A stretch of 63,448 nucleotides of DNA, filler included, from Parasitella parasitica NRRL 2501 (Eukaryota > Fungi > Mucoromycota): the NCBI GenBank assembly GCA_025201805.1. It is 8 parts of 8 records of this genome, joined end to end, with 100 filler letters (N's around TTAATTAATTAA, not from the genome) between each part and the next. Parts side by side here need not be neighbours in the genome. Positions count along the whole stretch, not along the records: positions 40,710 to 52,720 come from MU619292.1; 7 more parts are not named here. One strand, 5' to 3'. Below the pieces are notes generated by a model, which was given only the letters and a program-made list of their open reading frames with translations, had not been told where the DNA came from and made no database searches. Both the position numbers and the translations under genes were made by a program. Below, one piece after another: positions 4,405 to 52,720 of this stretch (position 1 is the first letter of the stretch; each line of letters begins with the position of its first letter).

Positions 4405-5453
4405 TTATTTCGGATGACAGCTGGGTCTACTGATGTTGATCTTATTCTTGTTGGCTAGCCAAGGACTCACTTGGTACAAAAATGTGCCGTTATCGTGGAC
4501 TAGTGTCATCGAAAGAAGTTTTTTGCAATGATTGATGGATTTTGTTATGTCTGTATCGTATCCTACCAAAGCGATGAGAAAAACGTTGCTGATAGGCCAG
4601 ACGACAAGAACCATGATAGGATTATCATTTGCCTACATAGTACGATGGTTAGAATCTATGAAAGAAAAGGGCTATATATTTACAGTAATGTAGTAGACTG
4701 TGCACACACAAGGCTGACGATTGAAAGGAGTGTGGTTCTTGTTGCATTAGAAATGACTACAGACCTGTAAAAATTGACATTTCCGCCCACATGATCAGCA
4801 TAAAGCCTTCGAATATGGTTCACTAGGATACAAGTAATAACTATGTTAACATAAAAGCCTATGGCAGTATCAAACAAGGTATCAGCTATGCCAATCTAAG
4901 ATAAAACATGAGTATTATAAAAACAAAAGCAAGATGGCATAGTTAAAAGTTTACCACACGCTTGTCCTATATCTGCAGACACTCATATACACTTCTGTCC
5001 AAATGCGAGAATAGAGTATCTCAAATACACACACACTATGGATCGAAGGATGAATATGAGAATATGTATGAAATTGAAAAGAGCATATCTTTGAAGTAAC
5101 AATATGGAAATATGAGCTAGACAGCTGACATGATAAAATGAATCAGCAATTCTTCCAGTTAGCAGACAATGATGCATTAAAGAACTAAATGAAACGAATT
5201 AATTTCCTTTTTTTTTATATATACATATTATATGTCAAAATATCTAGCTTCTCTACGTTGAACTGAATACTGCAAATATTGAGCTCTTGACAATCATGGC
5301 TACAGCCATTGTAATTTTCAAAGCACGAACCAGGTATGTTTTCTGGCCTTTGGCCAAGAATACCGTTTTCACAACCAATTCTATACAAAGAGATATGGCA
5401 GCACCTTCTAGCACCAAATGAGTCAACTGTAATCGTGGTACACTTGCCTCCAT
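4405..5453 (-). pseudogene. Seven-transmembrane, GPCR-like membrane protein gene with an apparent frameshift
   Basis: Four exons joined by GT-AG introns (first intron 5256-5185 is in phase) give about 7 hydrophobic segments, with a Cys at the top of TM3 and one in the TM4-TM5 loop. The frame breaks in a (TG)n run near 5027-5036. Confidence 0.5.
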
Positions 5454-5677
5454 GTGGCTGAATTGAAACACAAACTGGGAAAAAAAAACGAGTTGTTCTG
5501 TTACAAGTCGAGGGCCTTGGTTTCGTCTAAATGAAAATGACAACCACCATGATCTGGTGCTTTTGTAATTTGCACTCAGTTGACCAGTGATAAGAAGGTT
5601 GAGAAAGAGAGAGAGAGAAACACCTCTTTTCCATTTTGTTTCATACATAAAATAAACACACCGATAGTAAAAACATA

Positions 5678-6741
5678 ATGAGTTCAGTTTCCATCGAGGA
5701 CAAGGTCAAAATTGCGTCAGATTTTCTTCTCTCTAGCCCACCAGGAGAAGTCAACGATGTATTCAACGGTAATTTCCTTGCATACATATTACTAGCAACG
5801 CGTATTTACAACCCAAAGATAGATGTTCGTACCTTGGTTGATAATGATCAAGGGCTTCAAGAGGGCATCCTACAGGCCCTGGAGCAATACAACACAGAAC
5901 AGCACATCACAGTTACGCCTCCTGGATTAGATTACGACGTAAGTTTATTTATATAAAAATGCCATCATCATCGCAACCAACATAATGAAATCAGGTTATT
6001 GTATCTAAATATGGTAAAATTGAGCAAGATAGATACCTTGATCCTCGTTCCAAGCAGACATTTAAATTTGACCATATGCGCTTGGTAAGCGAATCTTGCT
6101 CGTTATCTGTGTGTAGAGACGGGTATCATTAAGATATTTTTTTTGCTTAGACGGCCTCTGATGTGGAGGAATACGCAGTTGAAAATCAACAGGAGCCTCT
6201 TAGAGCTTCTGTTGAAAAGGAGTGTTTAGCCTATGTCGACGATCATTTTCCTAATGGCGTGTGTACCATTTACTGCACTAACGACGATATCACTATTGCC
6301 ATTGTCGACAACAAGTACAACCCCAATAACTTTTGGAACGGAAGATGGCTTGCTTTGTGGACATACGATACCCAATCAAACGAACTAAAGGGCCACACCA
6401 AGGTTAATGTTCATTACTATGAGGATGGAAATGTTCAATTAAATACTAAAAAGAGTGCGCAAGTTACCGTTGCCAAGACGGAAGTAAGTAGAAGGAGGTG
6501 GCTAGTGAGAAAAAAAAGTCTAATGCCTGCAAATTAGGACTTTGCGCAGTTGGCGAAATCTCTTGTCAAGGAAATCTCGACTTTTGACAAACAATACCAT
6601 AGCGCAATGAACGAAAGTTACAGCGACCTTGCCGAGAATACGTTCAAGGGATTGAGAAGAGCTTTGCCTATGACCTGCAACTTGTTGGATTGGAACAAGA
6701 TTTCAAACTACAAGATCGGTAGCGAGTTGTCCCAAAAATAA
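5678..6741 (+). CDS. CAP1: F-actin capping protein alpha subunit (multi-exon)
   Basis: SPPGEVNDVFND, NNFWNGRW, VHYYEDGNVQL and FKGLRRALP motifs across GT-AG-joined exons. Confidence 0.96.
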
Positions 6742-7304
6742 ACCATCTTTTTGAGAGCGAACCTCCCTTTTTTTTNNNNNNNNNNNNNNNNNNNNNNNNN
6801 NNNNNNNNNNNNNNNNNNNNNNNNNNNNNNNNNNNNNNNNNNNNNNNNNNNNNNNNNNNNNNNNNNNNNNNNNNNNNNNNNNNNNNNNNNNNNNNNNNNN
6901 NNNNNNNNNNNNNNNNNNNNNNNNNNNNNNNNNNNNNNNNNNNNNNNNNNNNNNNNNNNNNNNNNNNNNNNNNNNNNNNNNNNNNNNNNNNNNNNNNNNN
7001 NNNNNNNNNNNNNNNNNNNNNNNNNNNNNNNNNNNNNNNNNNNNNNNNNNNNNNNNNNNNNNNNNNNNNNNNNNNNNNNNNNNNNNNNNNNNNNNNNNNN
7101 NNNNNNNNNNNNNNNNNNNNNNNNNNNNNNNNNNNNNNNNNNNNNNNNNNNNNNNNNNNNNNNNNNNNNNNNNNNNNNNNNNNNNNNNNNNNNNNNNNNN
7201 NNNNNNNNNNNNNNNNNNNNNNNNNNNNNNNNNNNNNNNNNNNNNNNNNNNNNNNNNNNNNNNNNNNNNNNNNNNNNNNNNNNNNNNNNNNNNNNCAAAT
7301 AATA

Positions 7305-9270
7305 ATGTCGAATACAAAAGAGCTTTGCATTGTGCTGAAAAATCCATACAAGTGCTACTACCCTGGAGATCTTATTCAAGGCATGTATACAGATGCATAA
7401 ACGAAGCAGCTGGCTAAACATGGAATATAGGTCACATCAACTTGAATTTAAGAAAATCCGTCGATATCCAGCACATTGCCGTCGCATTCAATGGCTGCAT
7501 CGAAGGCTGCGGCGACAAAGTCCCGTTGATCAACGACCTCAGACTACTCGTAACGCCTACAAACAGCCAGAAATACACAACACTGCATCCTGGCCAAAGC
7601 TACAGCTATGATTTTGAATTCAAAATACCATCAAACAAAAGACTACCCAGTTGCGCCAATGTACGTACAATAGAGCAGCATGAGCCAAATCAGCCGGCAT
7701 TTGTACTAAACATCTTGTGCTGTGTAAATATAGATTCCAAAAGTCGCAAAAATCTCATACATCCTGACAGCAACTCACAAAAAACCAATGTTCAAATTCT
7801 CTCATGCGCTATCAAGCGCCACCCAGGAAATCAAAATCCTGGACATGATCAATGTCCTTTTGCCCGACTATCGTATGCCTGTAAAGATGAGCAACGATCT
7901 GGGCTTTATCAACGGAAGCAAATTGTCGCAATGGTGCTTGAGTTTGGCAAGATCAGCCTTTACTCGAGGTGAAAATATCCAGCTAGAATGCCAAATAAAC
8001 CATTTTCCTATTATGGAAAAAGCGAAGGCCATCAAGGTCTCGCTAATGAGACAAGTCTACAAGACCAGCTCTGCAAAGTAAGTATATCAGTGTTCATGTG
8101 TTATCATCATGACGTTCCCTGTGCTCATTTGCCTGCATTTTTGCAACGTAGAATTTTGGAGAACAAAGTATTATCGAGCACGACTCTTGATATAGATACG
8201 AAAGAAAACTCGCCAAGCCAATGTATTCCTGTCGAGTTGCATGTCCCCTACGATACGCCACCAAGTATATTTCCAGATTCAGGGAGAACATTGAGCGTCT
8301 CATACGTAATACAAGCAGAGTTGAAGATGAAGGGAGTCAAAACAGCCATCAAGCTAAAGCCAGTCTACAAGCAAGAAGTTACTATAGTGATTGGCACTTT
8401 TTCGATTGATAGTATGCCTGCCCATGACAACAGTAAGTGATGTAATCACATTATCACATTATGGATTTACAAGAAACTAATTTTTTTTTTTTTGCAGATC
8501 CCCCTCAAAAATCTCTACATCCATTAGCATCTGTACCATCATCGTCACAGCCAATGCATAGAAAGAGCACAACAGATCTGCTGCCTATAAGACGAAAAAG
8601 CACAGCACAGCCTCCTGTGCCTATGCCAGCTCAAGTCTCGTTTTCTAAATTTGACAATATTATGAAGCCCTTACCTAGACTTGAAAAGGTTACACACAGA
8701 AAATCGTATGGAAATACTGCCAGTAAGTCACTGTCATCGCCTACACCCTCCGCATCGCCATCTCCAACCCCATCTTACTCGATGCGCGTAACATCCAACC
8801 AGCAAGAGTTTGACGACTATATACCAGCCACGCCTTTACGAAGGTTGTCTTTGTCCTCTGCTCGGTCATCCACATCAACTGCAGTGAACGATAGATCACT
8901 AACGCCGTTGCCATCCATGAAATCAGCTCAAGTGCATCCATACAGTACAGTCAGCTATTTGAGCCGCAAAAACGCTCCAAGGCCTTCTCTGCTGTCAGTC
9001 CAGAGACCTCATGAAATTGGTCCCAATGATATCATCACGAAACAAGGCACTCCTGCTGCTGAAAATGGCGGTGGTGCTTACTTTAGTGCTAAAGCCTTGG
9101 ACGCAGGTGGGGAGGACGAGAACGGCAGTTCCATCCCAGAGTTACTGTCTAGACATGATACAATTTCGACGGCGTCTTCCAGCGGAATAGCGGACCCATT
9201 ACAAGTAGTTTCGAGTGCTAAACCTACCATTGCAGTGACACCGATTGATAGATCCAGTAATGTACAATAA
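7305..9270 (+). CDS. Alpha-arrestin-like (arrestin N and C domain) protein with S/P-rich tail
   Basis: YYPGDLIQGHINL, YSYDFEFKIP...LPS, AFTRGENIQL, L.VP.DTPPS and I.IGT motifs. Five exons; the first intron (7381-7430) must be GC-AG to keep frame. Confidence 0.8.
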
Positions 9271-9380
9271 AAACCCACGACTGCCTTTCGTTTCCATTCA
9301 ATCAGTTTTGCATTTTTTTTTTTTTTTTTTTTTCCCATTTGCTACCTTGTTGCAGTAAATCTCGCTCTCATTGCATACGT

Positions 9381-12023
<2,643 letters not shown>

Positions 12024-49627: not shown

Positions 49628-50967
49628 ATGGTAAAGTATCCAGACAAAACGAATTTAAAAGTCTATATCCATCTCGAGCATCCATCAGAGAACTTCCATC
49701 CATCGAAACCTGTACACGAATTGAGAAAAAGAGACCAGAAAACGATGTGTGTGTGTCCATCTGTGTCGAGATGGATGTTTGACACATTTCAACTATAAAC
49801 GTTTGCATTCATTCTAACAAACATGTTCAATTGTAGTCCGCTGCCAGACCTGTCCTCAACGTCTACGCCGAGTGCGGTAAGAATGTCTCTGCCACTGTTC
49901 CTCTTCCTGCTGTCTTTAAGGCCCCCATTCGTCCTGATATCGTCAATTTTGTCCACACCAACATGGCCAAGAACAAGCGTCAAGCTTATGCCGTGTCTGA
50001 CAAGGCCGGTGAACAAACTTCTGCCGAATCTTGGGGAACTGGTCGTGCTGTTGCTCGTATCCCTCGTGTCAATGGCTCTGGCACTCACCGTGCTGGCCAA
50101 GCTGCCTTTGGTAACATGTGTCGTGGCGGTCGTATGTTTGCTCCCACAAAGACCTGGAGAAAGTGGCACATCAAGACTAACCTTAACCAAAAGCGTTTCG
50201 CTACTGCCTCTGCTTTAGCTGCTTCTGCTCTTCCCTCTTTGGTTATGGCTCGTGGTCATCGTGTTGAAAAGATTGAGGAGGTTCCTCTTGTTGTCGCTGA
50301 CTCTATTGAAAAGTTGACCAAGACCAAGGAAGCTGTTGCTTTGTTGAAATCTCTTAACGCTTACGCTGATGTCGTCAAAGTCTCCAACTCTCGCAAGCTC
50401 CGTGCTGGCCAAGGTAAGCTCCGTAACCGTCGCCACAGACAACGCCGTGGTCCACTTGTCATTTACAACGAGGATAACGGTCTTGTCAAGGCTTTCCGTA
50501 ACTTGCCTGGCCTCGAACTCGTTAACGTTCGCCGTCTTAACCTTTTGCAACTCGCTCCTGGTGGACATCTTGGTCGCTTCATTATCTGGACTCAATCTGC
50601 CATTTCTCTCCTTGATGAACTCTATGGCACCTATGAAGCTCCTGCTACCTTGAAGAAGGACTATGTTTTGCCTGCTCACATCATGACTAACCCTGACGTT
50701 GCTCGTCTCATTAACTCTGATGAGATCCAATCTGTTGTGCGTCCTGCTGGCAACAAGCATCACAAGCGTCCCTTCACACAAAAGAAGAACCCCCTCAAGA
50801 ATCAAGGTGTTATGAACCGCCTTAACCCTTATGCCCAAGTCCTTCGTCGTGCTGAGCTCGTTAAATCTGAAAAGATTGCTGCTGGTAAGGTTACCAAGGT
50901 TCAAAAGAAGCGTTCTACTACCTCCATTGCTTCCAAAAAGTTCTTGGAAACTCTTCGTTCTGATTAA
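49628..50967 (+). CDS. RPL4: 60S ribosomal protein L4 (uL4)
   Basis: ATG micro-exon, intron 49631-49836, then SAARP...[23 protein letters not shown] and [15 protein letters not shown]. Confidence 0.97.
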
Positions 50968-51528
50968 ATTCGTTGCATCTAATACGTAATAAATCTTTAT
51001 TAACTATTCATGTTATAAAATATTATGCGTTTAATATATTTGTTTATTCAATATTTGCTTTTAGGAGGGACACATCGCGGAGTGGTGGACCCTGAGGACG
51101 AAAATTGAAACTATAGATTCTGATCTAATGAAGAGGAAGAGAGAGCAGAGAAAGACGGTATATATATTTATATATGAGGCTAAAAAAGAAGAAATTTAGG
51201 GATGAGGATCAAACGAAATTTGAAAAGAGAAATTAGTTGCGAAAACTTGATGATAATGGATAGTCCAAATAGCTTGTTGAATGCATGTAAATACATGAAA
51301 AGCGTATGAGTCAGGAAAAATAGGTGAGAGGAGGTGAAGAAAAAAAAAAGAAAGAGCTCAAGCATTAGACTGAGCACTGATAAATAAGCATTGACAACAT
51401 TCCAATTCATTTATCAGAAGTATTTAATCGATCTTGCAAGTTGTCGCTGATAATTGGCAGTTGACTGCTTCCCTAACATTCGTCAATTCTACTGAAGTTA
51501 CAGACCAAAATGCAAAAATAACATTATA

Positions 51529-51700
51529 CAGTCGTTCCAATGCCAAAGGGCAGTTTTTTAGAAAAATAGGCGAGTGATAAATTTGTTCAATGGACGTTTT
51601 TTTAAATCTCAATGGGCGGTTTCCTATAACCCTAAGGACGGTTTCTGATAACCCAAAGGGCGGGTTTTTTTTATTCCCAAAAGGCGGGTTGATTTTTCTC
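51529..51700. mobile_element. Tc1/mariner-like terminus (outer) with about 22-bp subterminal tandem repeats
   Basis: TA|CAGTCGTTCC start followed by about 7 degenerate CCAAAGGGCGGTTT units. Confidence 0.5.
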
Positions 51701-51736
51701 GAACTATCTTCAACCAAATGTCTTTATTCTTAAGTA

Positions 51737-51960
51737 CAGTCGACGAAACTAGGTTGGGCCAGTAAGAAAAAATTTGGGTCATTTTAAAATTGAATTTGGA
51801 CGTCGCAATGAAAGTGAGACACCAGTATGAAAATGGGACAGCAATATGAAATTGGGACGCCAGTATGAAAATGGAACAGCAATAAGTAGAAGGGGACATA
51901 TTAGTTTTTGGACCAATCAAACTTTTTTTTTCAATAGGCCAACTTCCCGTAAATAAGGGG
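51737..51960. mobile_element. Tc1/mariner-like terminus (inner) downstream of the Fanzor ORF, with about 19-bp tandem repeats
   Basis: TA|CAGTCGACGAAAC start followed by degenerate TGGGACGCCAGTATGAAAA units, best conserved at 51813-51890. Confidence 0.55.
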
Positions 51961-51990
51961 TGTCTTGCTGTTATGCAAGACATAGTATAG
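51737..51990 (-). ncRNA. Candidate Fanzor omega-RNA region
   Basis: Lies between the Fanzor stop and the putative element end, where omega-RNAs are known to be encoded; contains a perfect 8-bp stem at 51961-51982. Boundaries unknown. Confidence 0.35.
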
Positions 51991-51991
51991 C

Positions 51992-52720
51992 TTAAGCTAT
52001 TTTTGTGCAAACGATAATAATGATATTAGTCCATGAAATAATTAAATCCATATTAATATCATGATAGCATACCTCGCTGAAACTCTTCCGGCCGGTTGTT
52101 GCTGTTGGCAACCATATGCAAGAAGATTGAGCGTATATTGAGACTTGCCATATGATCTCTTTTCCATCGAGTGTGACAGGTGTTGCAGCTGAGAACTGGA
52201 TGGATCTTAAAATTGGCATTGTCTCGTTCGTTAGTAGTACTTCGTAGGTGGCATCTGGGGGCATATTTGACTTGTCAGGTACTCGTCAATCATAACCACG
52301 TACTTTCTTGAATTTGGTCGGTTCCGTCTGATCGACTTGACGTAATTTAGCAAGGCTTTTCTGAACACTTTTGTTGAAGAGGGTACATTCCCACGAAGTC
52401 CACCGAACAGAGCAGAGCCAAACGCCACCACTGTAGGTCTTTCAGCCTCACCAGCATTGTCTCTAGGGGCTAGCGGTTTCCACTTTTGTTGATTTGCTTG
52501 CTGTATATCAGGATTGTCTTCTTGATATTTTCTGCTACCTGTAAACAAACGCTTGCACATTTCGGTCAATGCCTTTTGCTTATTCCTATAGCTGTGGTAT
52601 TTGAGTTTTTTTAATCCAGTTGTGTAGTAGTCTTTAATCGTCTGAAAATTCCGAAATATATATCGCAATGCTTGATTGAACCGATCCCAGTTGCATGTCT
52701 TGGTTGATGGTGTATCAGAA
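51992..52720 (-). mobile_element. Fanzor1 (eukaryotic TnpB-like RNA-guided nuclease), C-terminal half, with one frameshift
   Basis: VVAFGSALFG..RG and VVMIDEYLTSQICP (RuvC-II). Removing one C from a 5-C run near 52257-52261 gives CPRC...IHPVLSCNTC..RWKRDHMASLNI (zinc finger, RuvC-III). The 5' part lies beyond the contig edge. Confidence 0.88.

What the first reader, a model, noticed from the sequence alone, without database searches (positions are those of the whole stretch)
51992..52720. Fanzor1 RNA-guided nuclease hidden by a single homopolymer frameshift
Seen: the ORF track reads ...IDEYLTSQICPQMPPTKYY*. Deleting one C from a 5-C run restores CPRC-x19-CNTC and RWKRDHMASLNIRSIF, so the RuvC-II Glu, the zinc finger and the RuvC-III Asp are all intact. 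Known: this architecture defines TnpB/Fanzor OMEGA nucleases, and Fanzor1 occurs in fungi including Mucorales. Inference: one lesion in about 220 codons suggests a young copy or a sequencing error; the contig break inside the gene suggests a multicopy family with intact members.
Basis: partly seen in the sequence, partly recalled or inferred. Interest (0 to 1): 0.9.

Follow-up and report, generated by a model that had tools for sequence, protein, structure and literature searches.

The report
Frameshifted Fanzor1 transposon gene copy
The contig ends inside one slightly damaged copy of a multicopy Mucor transposon that encodes a Fanzor1 RNA-guided nuclease, a kind of gene already known from these fungi, so the reading is correct but ordinary.

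Summary
On the minus strand, 52719-52234 reads 162 codons ending ...VVMIDEYLTSQICPQMPPTKYY*. The next frame (52271-52062) reads ..PRCHLRSTT..SCNTCHTRWKRDHMASLNIRSIF..GMLS*. The switch lies at a C5 run (G5 on +, 52257-52261).

The two pieces match adjoining parts of an intact 827-aa relative (residues 612-763 and 762-824). Five related loci, and most contigs of four public runs, have four bases there.

The family occurs only in Mucorales among the hits. Its profile hits Spizellomyces Fanzor1 (E 5e-16) and Guillardia Fanzor1 (3e-13) ahead of any TnpB. A predicted fold ranks the three solved Fanzor1 proteins first. Relatives carry the RuvC-I Asp (WGxDPG).

The window shows the Fanzor hallmark: Gly at the canonical RuvC-II position (VVAFG), and the alternative Glu (IDEY) 45 residues later.

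The gene sits in a multicopy element of about 4.7 kb with roughly 140-bp inverted ends (TA|CAGTCGACG...) and no transposase. The element ends at 51735. An RNA run shows in-frame, spliced sense transcripts.

This copy also has private non-synonymous changes (WNRD to WKRD), so it is probably a decaying copy; an assembly error is not excluded. The closest copies examined are all broken too. It is a new member of a known kind, of low interest.

The parts
52234..52720 (-). Fanzor1 ORF fragment, upstream frame (162 codons, cut by the contig edge). It holds the helical region after RuvC-I. It also holds VVAFG (Gly101 at the canonical RuvC-II position, first base 52419) and the alternative catalytic Glu146 in IDEY (first base 52284).
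   Evidence: It matches P0001 at 62% identity (E 7e-56), P0106 residues 612-763 (E 1e-40), and L001 at 96.7% DNA identity.
52257..52261 (-). C5 run on the coding strand (G5 on the + strand) with one base too many. This is the +1 frameshift inside the Cys-Pro codons of the first CxxC.
   Evidence: Five related loci have four bases here. Most or all contig depth in four runs lacks one base here.
52062..52256 (-). Downstream frame: the rest of the TNB zinc ribbon (CPRC-x21-CNTC once the frame is joined) and the RuvC-III motif RWKRDHMASLNI (Asp188, first base 52157). Lys186 replaces the family's Asn.
   Evidence: Pfam PF07282 gives E 0.0016, 19 bits, below the cut-off. It matches P0106 residues 762-824 at E 6e-24. 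The motifs align with SpuFz1.
51997..52072 (-). A 76-nt GT..AG intron, starting 11 nt before the unspliced stop codon. After splicing the protein would end ...EEFQRA* instead of ...QRGMLS*.
   Evidence: The joint 51996/52073 (CT..AC on the + strand) is seen only in the RNA run X7, where depth dips in that bin. The donor and acceptor sequences are conserved in alignment A2.
51961..51980 (-). Conserved 3'-UTR hairpin GUCUUGC-AUAACA-GCAAGAC, a candidate piece of the guide-RNA scaffold. That role is inferred only.
   Evidence: Alignment A2 and RNAalifold: 8 pairs are kept in 6 of 6 loci, with one compensatory C-G to U-A change in Parasitella and three G-U changes.
51737..51882 (.). Right terminal inverted repeat of the element. 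The tip is CAGTCGACGAAACTAGGTTGGGCCAGTAAG. Four 19-nt subterminal repeats lie at 51793-51887.
   Evidence: It matches the left end of the L001 element in inverted orientation at 90% over 149 nt. L001's arms are 135 nt and 88% complementary. Tandem repeats. Ends aligned.
51735..51736 (.). TA dinucleotide at the element boundary, a putative TA target-site duplication. Sequence to the left of 51735 is the flank.
   Evidence: Contigs of all four runs diverge 'before 51735' into different flanks. TA precedes CAGTC at four independent ends with unrelated flanks.

Best explanation
The window ends inside one copy of a multicopy, non-autonomous DNA transposon of a Mucor-type fungus. The element is about 4.7 kb, has TA-flanked inverted ends of roughly 140 bp, and its only gene encodes a Fanzor1 protein, the eukaryotic TnpB-like nuclease guided by an omega RNA.

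The 219 C-terminal codons present here carry the Fanzor-type rearranged RuvC site: Gly at the canonical Glu position, the alternative Glu 45 residues later, the TNB zinc ribbon, and the RuvC-III Asp.

This particular copy has a private one-base insertion in a C-run that breaks the frame inside the zinc finger. It also has private amino-acid changes, so it is most likely a decaying, non-functional copy.

By analogy with characterised Fanzor1 proteins, functional members would bind an RNA transcribed from the 3' end of the element and cut DNA matching the flank-derived guide. Nothing in that last paragraph was tested here.
For: Shown here:
- The frames and the C5 run.
- The two pieces abut on an intact 827-aa relative.
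- 102 homologs at E<=0.001 in the representative search. The named hits of the P0001 search are all Mucorales or Umbelopsis, including Mucor circinelloides HMPREF1544_02846, which is nearly identical.
- The family profile hits SpuFz1 at 5.2e-16 and GtFz1 at 3e-13, ahead of TnpB.
- The fold search ranks SpuFz1, PpFz1 and GtFz1 first.
- Gly101 to Glu146 is 45 residues. This matches the 'alternative glutamate about 45 residues away' of Fanzors (PMC10530073), and the catalytic Glu in the loop before the TNB domain (PMC11423790).
- Element structure and ends.
- Multicopy status and the boundary at 51735.
- The extra C is private: five loci and the run contigs lack it.
- Three coding sites differ from every contig of the three organism-A runs (two of them also in X8): 52377, 52161 (N to K in WNRD) and 52111. 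All three are non-synonymous.
- About 1.6 kb of single-copy flank, including an A10 run, is identical with no gap to independent runs X1 and X3. The assembly therefore looks accurate.
- The other close copies are also pseudogenes.

Inferred: the RNA-guided mechanism, and the Tc1/mariner-type mobilisation in trans.
Against: - Contigs of the public runs collapse repeats and drop rare variants. They can therefore neither confirm nor exclude the C5 form at this locus.
- No raw reads were available.
- The pN/pS ratio against L001 is 0.46, from only 16 differences, which is not clearly neutral.
- The upstream two thirds of this copy, including RuvC-I, lie beyond the contig edge and are unknown.
- No omega RNA was defined. 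The 3' region as a whole folds no better than shuffles (z -0.9), and Rfam finds nothing.
Confidence: 0.65

Rival explanations
1. The copy is intact over this stretch, and the fifth C is an assembly or sequencing error in a homopolymer. The locus would then encode the normal Fanzor1 C-terminus.
For: It is a single-base change in a 5-base run. Every related locus and most run contigs have four bases. In X1, the best holder, no contig shows five. The 1006PhL copy L001 likewise has one single-base homopolymer indel in the same stretch, so such calls may be error-prone in these assemblies.
Against: The single-copy flank, including an A10 run, agrees perfectly with two independent runs. The copy also has private substitutions, which are not homopolymer artefacts, and all three coding ones change the protein, including the conserved WNRD motif. 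In X3 about half of the depth at 52257 lacks the deletion call.
Confidence: 0.3
2. It is not Fanzor1. It would instead be a Fanzor2 or IS607-type gene, or a bacterial TnpB, present through contamination or recent transfer.
For: On the pieces alone, Pfam and NCBIfam see only a weak Cas12f1-like TNB match (E 0.0016) and a weak IS200_TnpB match (E 0.034).
Against: The best profile and fold matches are the Fanzor1 structures. Fanzor2 ranks lower in the fold search and is absent from the sequence hits. Named homologs are all from Mucorales-type fungi, about 830-940 aa long, with long N-terminal extensions. A spliced GT..AG intron, a neighbouring ribosomal protein gene with its own intron, and eukaryote-type TA-flanked inverted ends all point to a eukaryotic host.
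Confidence: 0.03
3. The frameshift is functional, through programmed ribosomal frameshifting or a truncated regulatory protein.
For: None beyond the position of the shift in a homopolymer.
Against: No other copy or relative has the extra base. The transcribed form in the RNA run is the in-frame one. The shifted frame stops after 7 codons, inside the zinc finger.
Confidence: 0.02

Closest known systems
Fanzor1 of Spizellomyces punctatus (SpuFz1, PDB 8GKH and 9CEU-9CEZ), with GtFz1 and PpFz1
   Same: It is the best profile match (E 5.2e-16) and the best fold match. The aligned motifs are vDPG/IDPN (RuvC-I), DEYxTSxxCPRC (alternative Glu plus zinc finger) and WNRD (RuvC-III). Both are eukaryotic and sit in a TA-flanked TIR element. 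SPu-1 has 33-bp TIRs and a TA duplication according to PMC3627910.
   Different: Identity in the structural alignment is only about 14%. The Mucor family is longer (about 830-940 aa) and its inverted ends are much longer (about 140 bp, with 19-nt internal repeats). Plain phmmer with single family members does not reach any solved Fanzor. No omega RNA and no activity are known for this family.
Fanzor1 families MCi-1 to MCi-10 of Mucor circinelloides (Bao and Jurka 2013, PMC3627910)
   Same: Same host genus and same protein class. Both are multicopy DNA-transposon passengers. MCi-1 is also TA-flanked and mariner-associated.
   Different: Conserved motifs of this family (RDHMA, HLYLPW, FRPEQYT) and its end sequences are absent from that paper's protein file and from its DNA file as stored, which was cut. 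MCi-1 has 20-bp TIRs, a 686-aa Fanzor and a mariner transposase. This element has ends of about 140 bp and no transposase, so it appears to be a further, unlisted family.
Bacterial TnpB (ISDra2 and IS200/IS605 OrfB) and Cas12f
   Same: They share the RuvC plus TNB zinc-ribbon core. The matches are C-terminal: profile E 2e-6 to 4e-2, and fold E about 1e-5.
   Different: Most TnpB and Cas12f proteins have the canonical RuvC-II Glu. This family has Gly there and the shifted Glu. TnpB is about 400 aa, has no introns, and travels with a TnpA transposase.

Membership tests
Fanzor1 | RuvC-I aspartate upstream of the fragment | tested here: inconclusive
   It is not in the window, because the contig ends at 52720. 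It is present as WG(V/L)DPG in the 96.7%-identical copy L001 and in most of the aligned relatives that cover that region, where it aligns with SpuFz1 IDPN.
Fanzor1 | Canonical RuvC-II Glu replaced by Gly or Pro, with an alternative Glu about 45 residues downstream, just before the TNB domain | tested here: met
   VVAFG (Gly101) and IDEY (Glu146) are 45 residues apart. The definition comes from PMC10530073 and PMC11423790.
Fanzor1 | TNB zinc ribbon (CxxC...CxxC) followed by the RuvC-III Asp | tested here: met
   CPRC-x21-CNTC and RWKRDHMAS are present, but only when the reading is taken across the one-base frameshift. PF07282 scores 19 bits on the piece (below the cut-off) and 41 bits in relative P0001. 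The Asn next to the Asp is changed to Lys in this copy.
Fanzor1 | Closer to Fanzor1 than to Fanzor2 or TnpB | tested here: met
   In the profile search, SpuFz1 (5e-16) and GtFz1 (3e-13) come before TnpB (2e-6), and there is no Fanzor2 hit. Foldseek gives SpuFz1 2e-12, PpFz1 2e-9, GtFz1 3e-8 and Fanzor2 1e-5. No formal tree was built.
Fanzor1 | Eukaryotic adaptation: introns, and an N-terminal extension with basic NLS-like stretches | tested here: met
   A 76-nt GT..AG intron is seen in RNA contigs only. Relatives have Lys/Arg-rich N-terminal extensions of 250-350 aa.
Fanzor1 | Associated omega RNA at the 3' end of the element | tested here: inconclusive
   RNA-run contigs cover the 3' UTR up to the element end, and one hairpin is conserved with a compensatory change. 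However, the region as a whole has z -0.9 and gives no Rfam match.
Fanzor1 | RNA-guided DNA cleavage | not testable with these tools
   This needs biochemistry.
Tc1/mariner-type DNA transposon (non-autonomous) | Terminal inverted repeats | tested here: met
   In L001 the arms 4657-4791 and 9239-9373 are 135 nt and 88% complementary. The window end 51735-51882 matches L001's left end in inverted orientation at 90%.
Tc1/mariner-type DNA transposon (non-autonomous) | TA target-site duplication | tested here: inconclusive
   TA precedes CAGTC at four independent ends with unrelated flanks. No complete copy with both intact tips, and no empty site, was available.
Tc1/mariner-type DNA transposon (non-autonomous) | DD(E/D) transposase gene | tested here: not met
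   There is no ORF of 40 aa or more in the 1.1 kb between the left end and the Fanzor gene of L001, and no other gene in the element. If the element belongs to this superfamily, it must be mobilised in trans.

The most novel reading that the evidence does not exclude
This RDHMAS-type family is a so far uncatalogued, Mucorales-restricted Fanzor1 lineage that is still active. It is transcribed and spliced, and the majority sequence is in frame. It has unusually long, repeat-bearing inverted ends and a conserved 3'-UTR hairpin that belongs to its omega RNA. Intact members such as the 827-aa ORF in L002 would then be working RNA-guided nucleases with a scaffold and a TAM of their own.
Probability: 0.3. 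Interest if true: 0.4.

Novelty: new member of a known kind. Interest (0 to 1): 0.22.

Why it matters
Little changes for biology. Fanzor1 genes have been known in Mucor circinelloides since 2013, and thousands more have been catalogued since 2023. Close homologs of this one already sit in public protein sets as 'Cas12f1-like TNB domain-containing' proteins.

Three practical points follow:
- Gene models of this family in public Mucor and Parasitella annotations bridge frameshifts with false introns, so the proteins listed there are not evidence of intact genes.
- The family and its long-ended element seem absent from the original Mucor Fanzor list.
- An intact 827-codon relative, and evidence of spliced transcripts, give a starting point if someone wants another fungal Fanzor1 to characterise.

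Tried and rejected
- Pfam, NCBIfam and PDB sequence searches with the two pieces alone gave only sub-threshold hits: PF07282 at 19 bits, IS200_TnpB at E 0.034, and no Fanzor in the PDB. phmmer with full-length P0001 against the PDB was also nearly blank. A family profile was needed.
- Rfam found nothing at E<=1 over 51400-52720, and nothing at gathering scores over the whole piece.
- Folding the 262-nt 3' region gave z -0.9, so no global structure is claimed.
- I looked for the family in Bao and Jurka's supplementary proteins and DNA by short motifs and found none. Their DNA file is stored cut, so absence there is weaker.
- A resemblance between the 19-nt subterminal repeats and the MCi-1 tip was considered and dropped as too weak.
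- No inverted repeats were found around the L002 and L003 copies.
- The pN/pS ratio between the window and L001 (0.46, 16 differences) is too weak to call selection.
It was redone from the window file.
- I did not identify the host species from a single-copy gene. Placing it in Mucor rests on the 96.7% identity to a M. circinelloides 1006PhL locus.

Full report
**1. What is in the sequence**

The feature lies on the minus strand. From the piece edge, the frame starting at 52719 runs 162 codons without a stop. It ends ...NSRKYVVMIDEYLTSQICPQMPPTKYY*.

The adjacent frame, 52271-52062, reads QVKYAPRCHLRSTTNERDNANFKIHPVLSCNTCHTRWKRDHMASLNIRSIFLHMVANSNNRPEEFQRGMLS*.

The two frames meet at a run of five G on the + strand, 52257-52261, which is C5 on the coding strand.

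**2. It is a frameshift, and the extra base is private to this copy**

Against the intact 827-aa relative P0106, the first piece aligns to residues 612-763 (E 1e-40). The second aligns to residues 762-824 (E 6e-24). The two pieces are thus contiguous at the Cys-Pro codons.

Five related genomic loci all have four bases at the site. These are two copies from Mucor circinelloides 1006PhL, one from Parasitella parasitica, and two from other assemblies.

When contigs of four public runs were laid on the window, a one-base omission at 52257 was reported as follows:

| Run | Depth with the omission / total depth |
|---|---|
| X1 | 893 / 893 |
| X3 | 239.8 / 463.7 |
| X7 | 218.8 / 218.8 |
| X8 | 101.4 / 101.4 |

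**3. What the protein is**

The pieces alone give only weak family hits: PF07282 Cas12f1-like TNB at E 0.0016, below the cut-off, and IS200_TnpB at E 0.034. They give no PDB sequence hits.

A full scan of 1.8 billion representatives with the 162-aa piece found 102 homologs. The best is P0001, 568 aa and 62% identical. A search seeded with P0001 found proteins named only from Mucor circinelloides, M. flavus, Parasitella, Helicostylum, Benjaminiella, Radiomyces and Umbelopsis. One of them, HMPREF1544_02846 (P0103, 912 aa), is nearly identical to the window over the shared part.

A profile of the family (alignment A1) hits the following solved structures:

| Solved protein | E-value |
|---|---|
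| Spizellomyces punctatus Fanzor1 | 5.2e-16 |
| Guillardia theta Fanzor1 | 3e-13 |
| A TnpB | 2e-6 |
| LaTranC, Cas12f and other TnpB proteins | 5e-4 to 4e-2 |

The alignment pairs the family's vDPGvrD, PSxKT, DEYLTSQICPRC and WNRD motifs with the same motifs in SpuFz1.

An AlphaFold model of P0001 (pLDDT 72) ranks as follows in Foldseek:

| Solved protein | E-value |
|---|---|
| SpuFz1 | 2e-12 |
| PpFz1 | 2e-9 |
| GtFz1 | 3e-8 |
| Mimivirus Fanzor2 | 1e-5 |
| Cas12f and TnpB | 4e-5 and weaker |

The window carries the defining Fanzor rearrangement. A Gly sits where TnpB has the RuvC-II Glu (VVAFG, residue 101 of the read-through). The Glu in IDEY is exactly 45 residues later.

[quoted passage not shown] The RuvC-I Asp is not in the window. 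It is present as WGLDPG in L001, the 96.7%-identical copy, and in most of the aligned relatives that cover that region.

**4. The element around it**

The reverse complement of window 52720-51749 matches L001 (M. circinelloides KE123922.1) positions 8401-9373 at 96.7%. Window 51882-51735 also matches L001 4791-4643 in inverted orientation at about 90%.

L001 therefore holds a complete element of about 4.75 kb (4643-9387), with inverted arms of 135 nt that are 88% complementary.

The ends of independent copies read TA|CAGTCGACGAAACTAGGTTGGGCCAGTAAG, with unrelated flanks. The copies are the window, the left end of L001, L005 and L006. This pattern is expected of a TA-duplicating Tc1/mariner-type element, but no empty site was available.

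The arms contain four 19-nt repeats at 51793-51887.

There is no ORF of 40 aa or more between the left arm and the Fanzor gene in L001. The element is therefore non-autonomous.

L004 is an internal-deletion derivative of the same element.

In all four runs, contigs leave the window sequence 'before 51735' into several different flanks. Summed contig depth over 51705-52720 is several-fold that of the single-copy flank: 134.5 against about 1100-2500 in X1, and 29.6 against about 180-440 in X3. The family is therefore multicopy, which also explains the contig break.

**5. Expression**

Run X7 is RNA. It shows a spliced 79-nt GT..AG intron in the neighbouring ribosomal protein L4 transcript, and very high depth there.

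X7 also contains a 695-nt contig over 52147-52720 and beyond, with two substitutions and the in-frame four-base form.

Only X7 contains a joint 51996/52073. On the minus strand this is a 76-nt GT..AG intron beginning 11 nt before the unspliced stop. Depth dips in that bin. The donor and acceptor are conserved among six loci. Spliced, the protein would end ...EEFQRA*.

The adjacent single-copy spacer (51610-51704) has no depth in X7. DNA contamination is therefore an unlikely source of the signal.

**6. Is this copy alive?**

- *Differences from L001.* There are 16 coding substitutions (6 synonymous, 10 non-synonymous; pN/pS 0.46) and two single-base homopolymer indels, one private to each copy.
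- *Private coding differences.* At 52377, 52161 and 52111 every contig of the three organism-A runs differs from the window (two of them also in X8), and all three are non-synonymous. 52161 turns the near-invariant WNRD into WKRD, next to the catalytic Asp.
- *Assembly quality.* About 1.6 kb of single-copy flank, including an A10 run, is identical and gap-free in independent runs X1 and X3. The assembly therefore looks accurate.
- *My reading.* Together these points favour a real lesion in a drifting copy, at about 0.65-0.7, over an assembly error, at about 0.3. Collapsed contigs cannot decide, and no raw reads were on offer.

*Intact members.* The close copies I could read are all defective:
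- L001 is split into at least four ORFs.
- L004 has an internal deletion.
- The Parasitella copy has several breaks and has lost a zinc-finger Cys.

Their public gene models hide these breaks as introns. An uninterrupted ORF was found only in a more distant relative, the 827 codons of L002.

**7. Guide RNA**

In characterised Fanzor1 systems the omega RNA comes from the 3' end of the element. This rests on established knowledge and PMC11423790.

Here the 3' UTR is conserved to about 125 nt past the stop, even in Parasitella, which lacks the inverted ends.

It contains one hairpin (window 51961-51980, minus strand) that is kept in 6 of 6 loci, with one compensatory change.

The region as a whole folds no better than shuffles (z -0.9), and Rfam has no match. 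I therefore leave the omega RNA undefined.

**8. Comparison and novelty**

Bao and Jurka (PMC3627910) listed ten Fanzor1 families in M. circinelloides. Conserved motifs and end sequences of the present family are absent from their sequence supplements as stored. It seems to be an additional family. Its proteins are nevertheless already in public databases with a Cas12f1-like TNB label, and large surveys have since catalogued thousands of Fanzors (PMC10530073).

**Verdict.** This is a correct reading of an ordinary thing. It is a new member of a known kind, of low interest.

Noticed in passing
window 49963-51541 (+): A ribosomal protein L4 gene exon (ORF 49963-50967). RNA run X7 shows a spliced 79-nt GT..AG intron at 50986-51064, which lies after the ORF's stop codon, and the transcript contig runs on to about 51541. 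The DNA runs hold a second L4 copy about 10% different (39 of 379 letters).
   Followed up: partly
window 51527-51702: A second, unrelated repeat lies 33 nt from the Fanzor element end. Its contig depth is raised, loose ends occur at 51527 and 51702, and it contains a 22-nt tandem motif (51610-51663, about 2.5 copies). It is possibly the end of another small transposon.
   Followed up: no
L001 6001-9060; L003 4001-7120; L004 3001-6429: The public gene models for this family in Mucor circinelloides 1006PhL and Parasitella parasitica (P0103, P0104, P0105) bridge frameshifts and deletions with predicted introns. The annotated proteins look whole, but the loci are pseudogenes.
   Followed up: yes
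L005 1092-4867: An assembly labelled Umbelopsis isabellina (GCA_016758905.1) holds a copy about 77-80% identical at the DNA level to the Mucor element, including the TACAGTC end. This is surprisingly close for a different order. It could be horizontal transfer or a mislabelled or contaminated assembly.
   Followed up: no
L004 2555-2643 and 5706-5794: This internally deleted copy has truncated tips, and its flanks are themselves inverted copies of each other for at least 20 nt beyond the element. This suggests insertion into, or formation of, a larger palindrome.
   Followed up: no
L002 1439-3922: The intact 827-aa relative and several others (P0107, P0108, P0115) carry an N-terminal Cys/His motif (CxxC...H...C, zinc-knuckle-like) that the Mucor circinelloides copies lack.
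   Followed up: no
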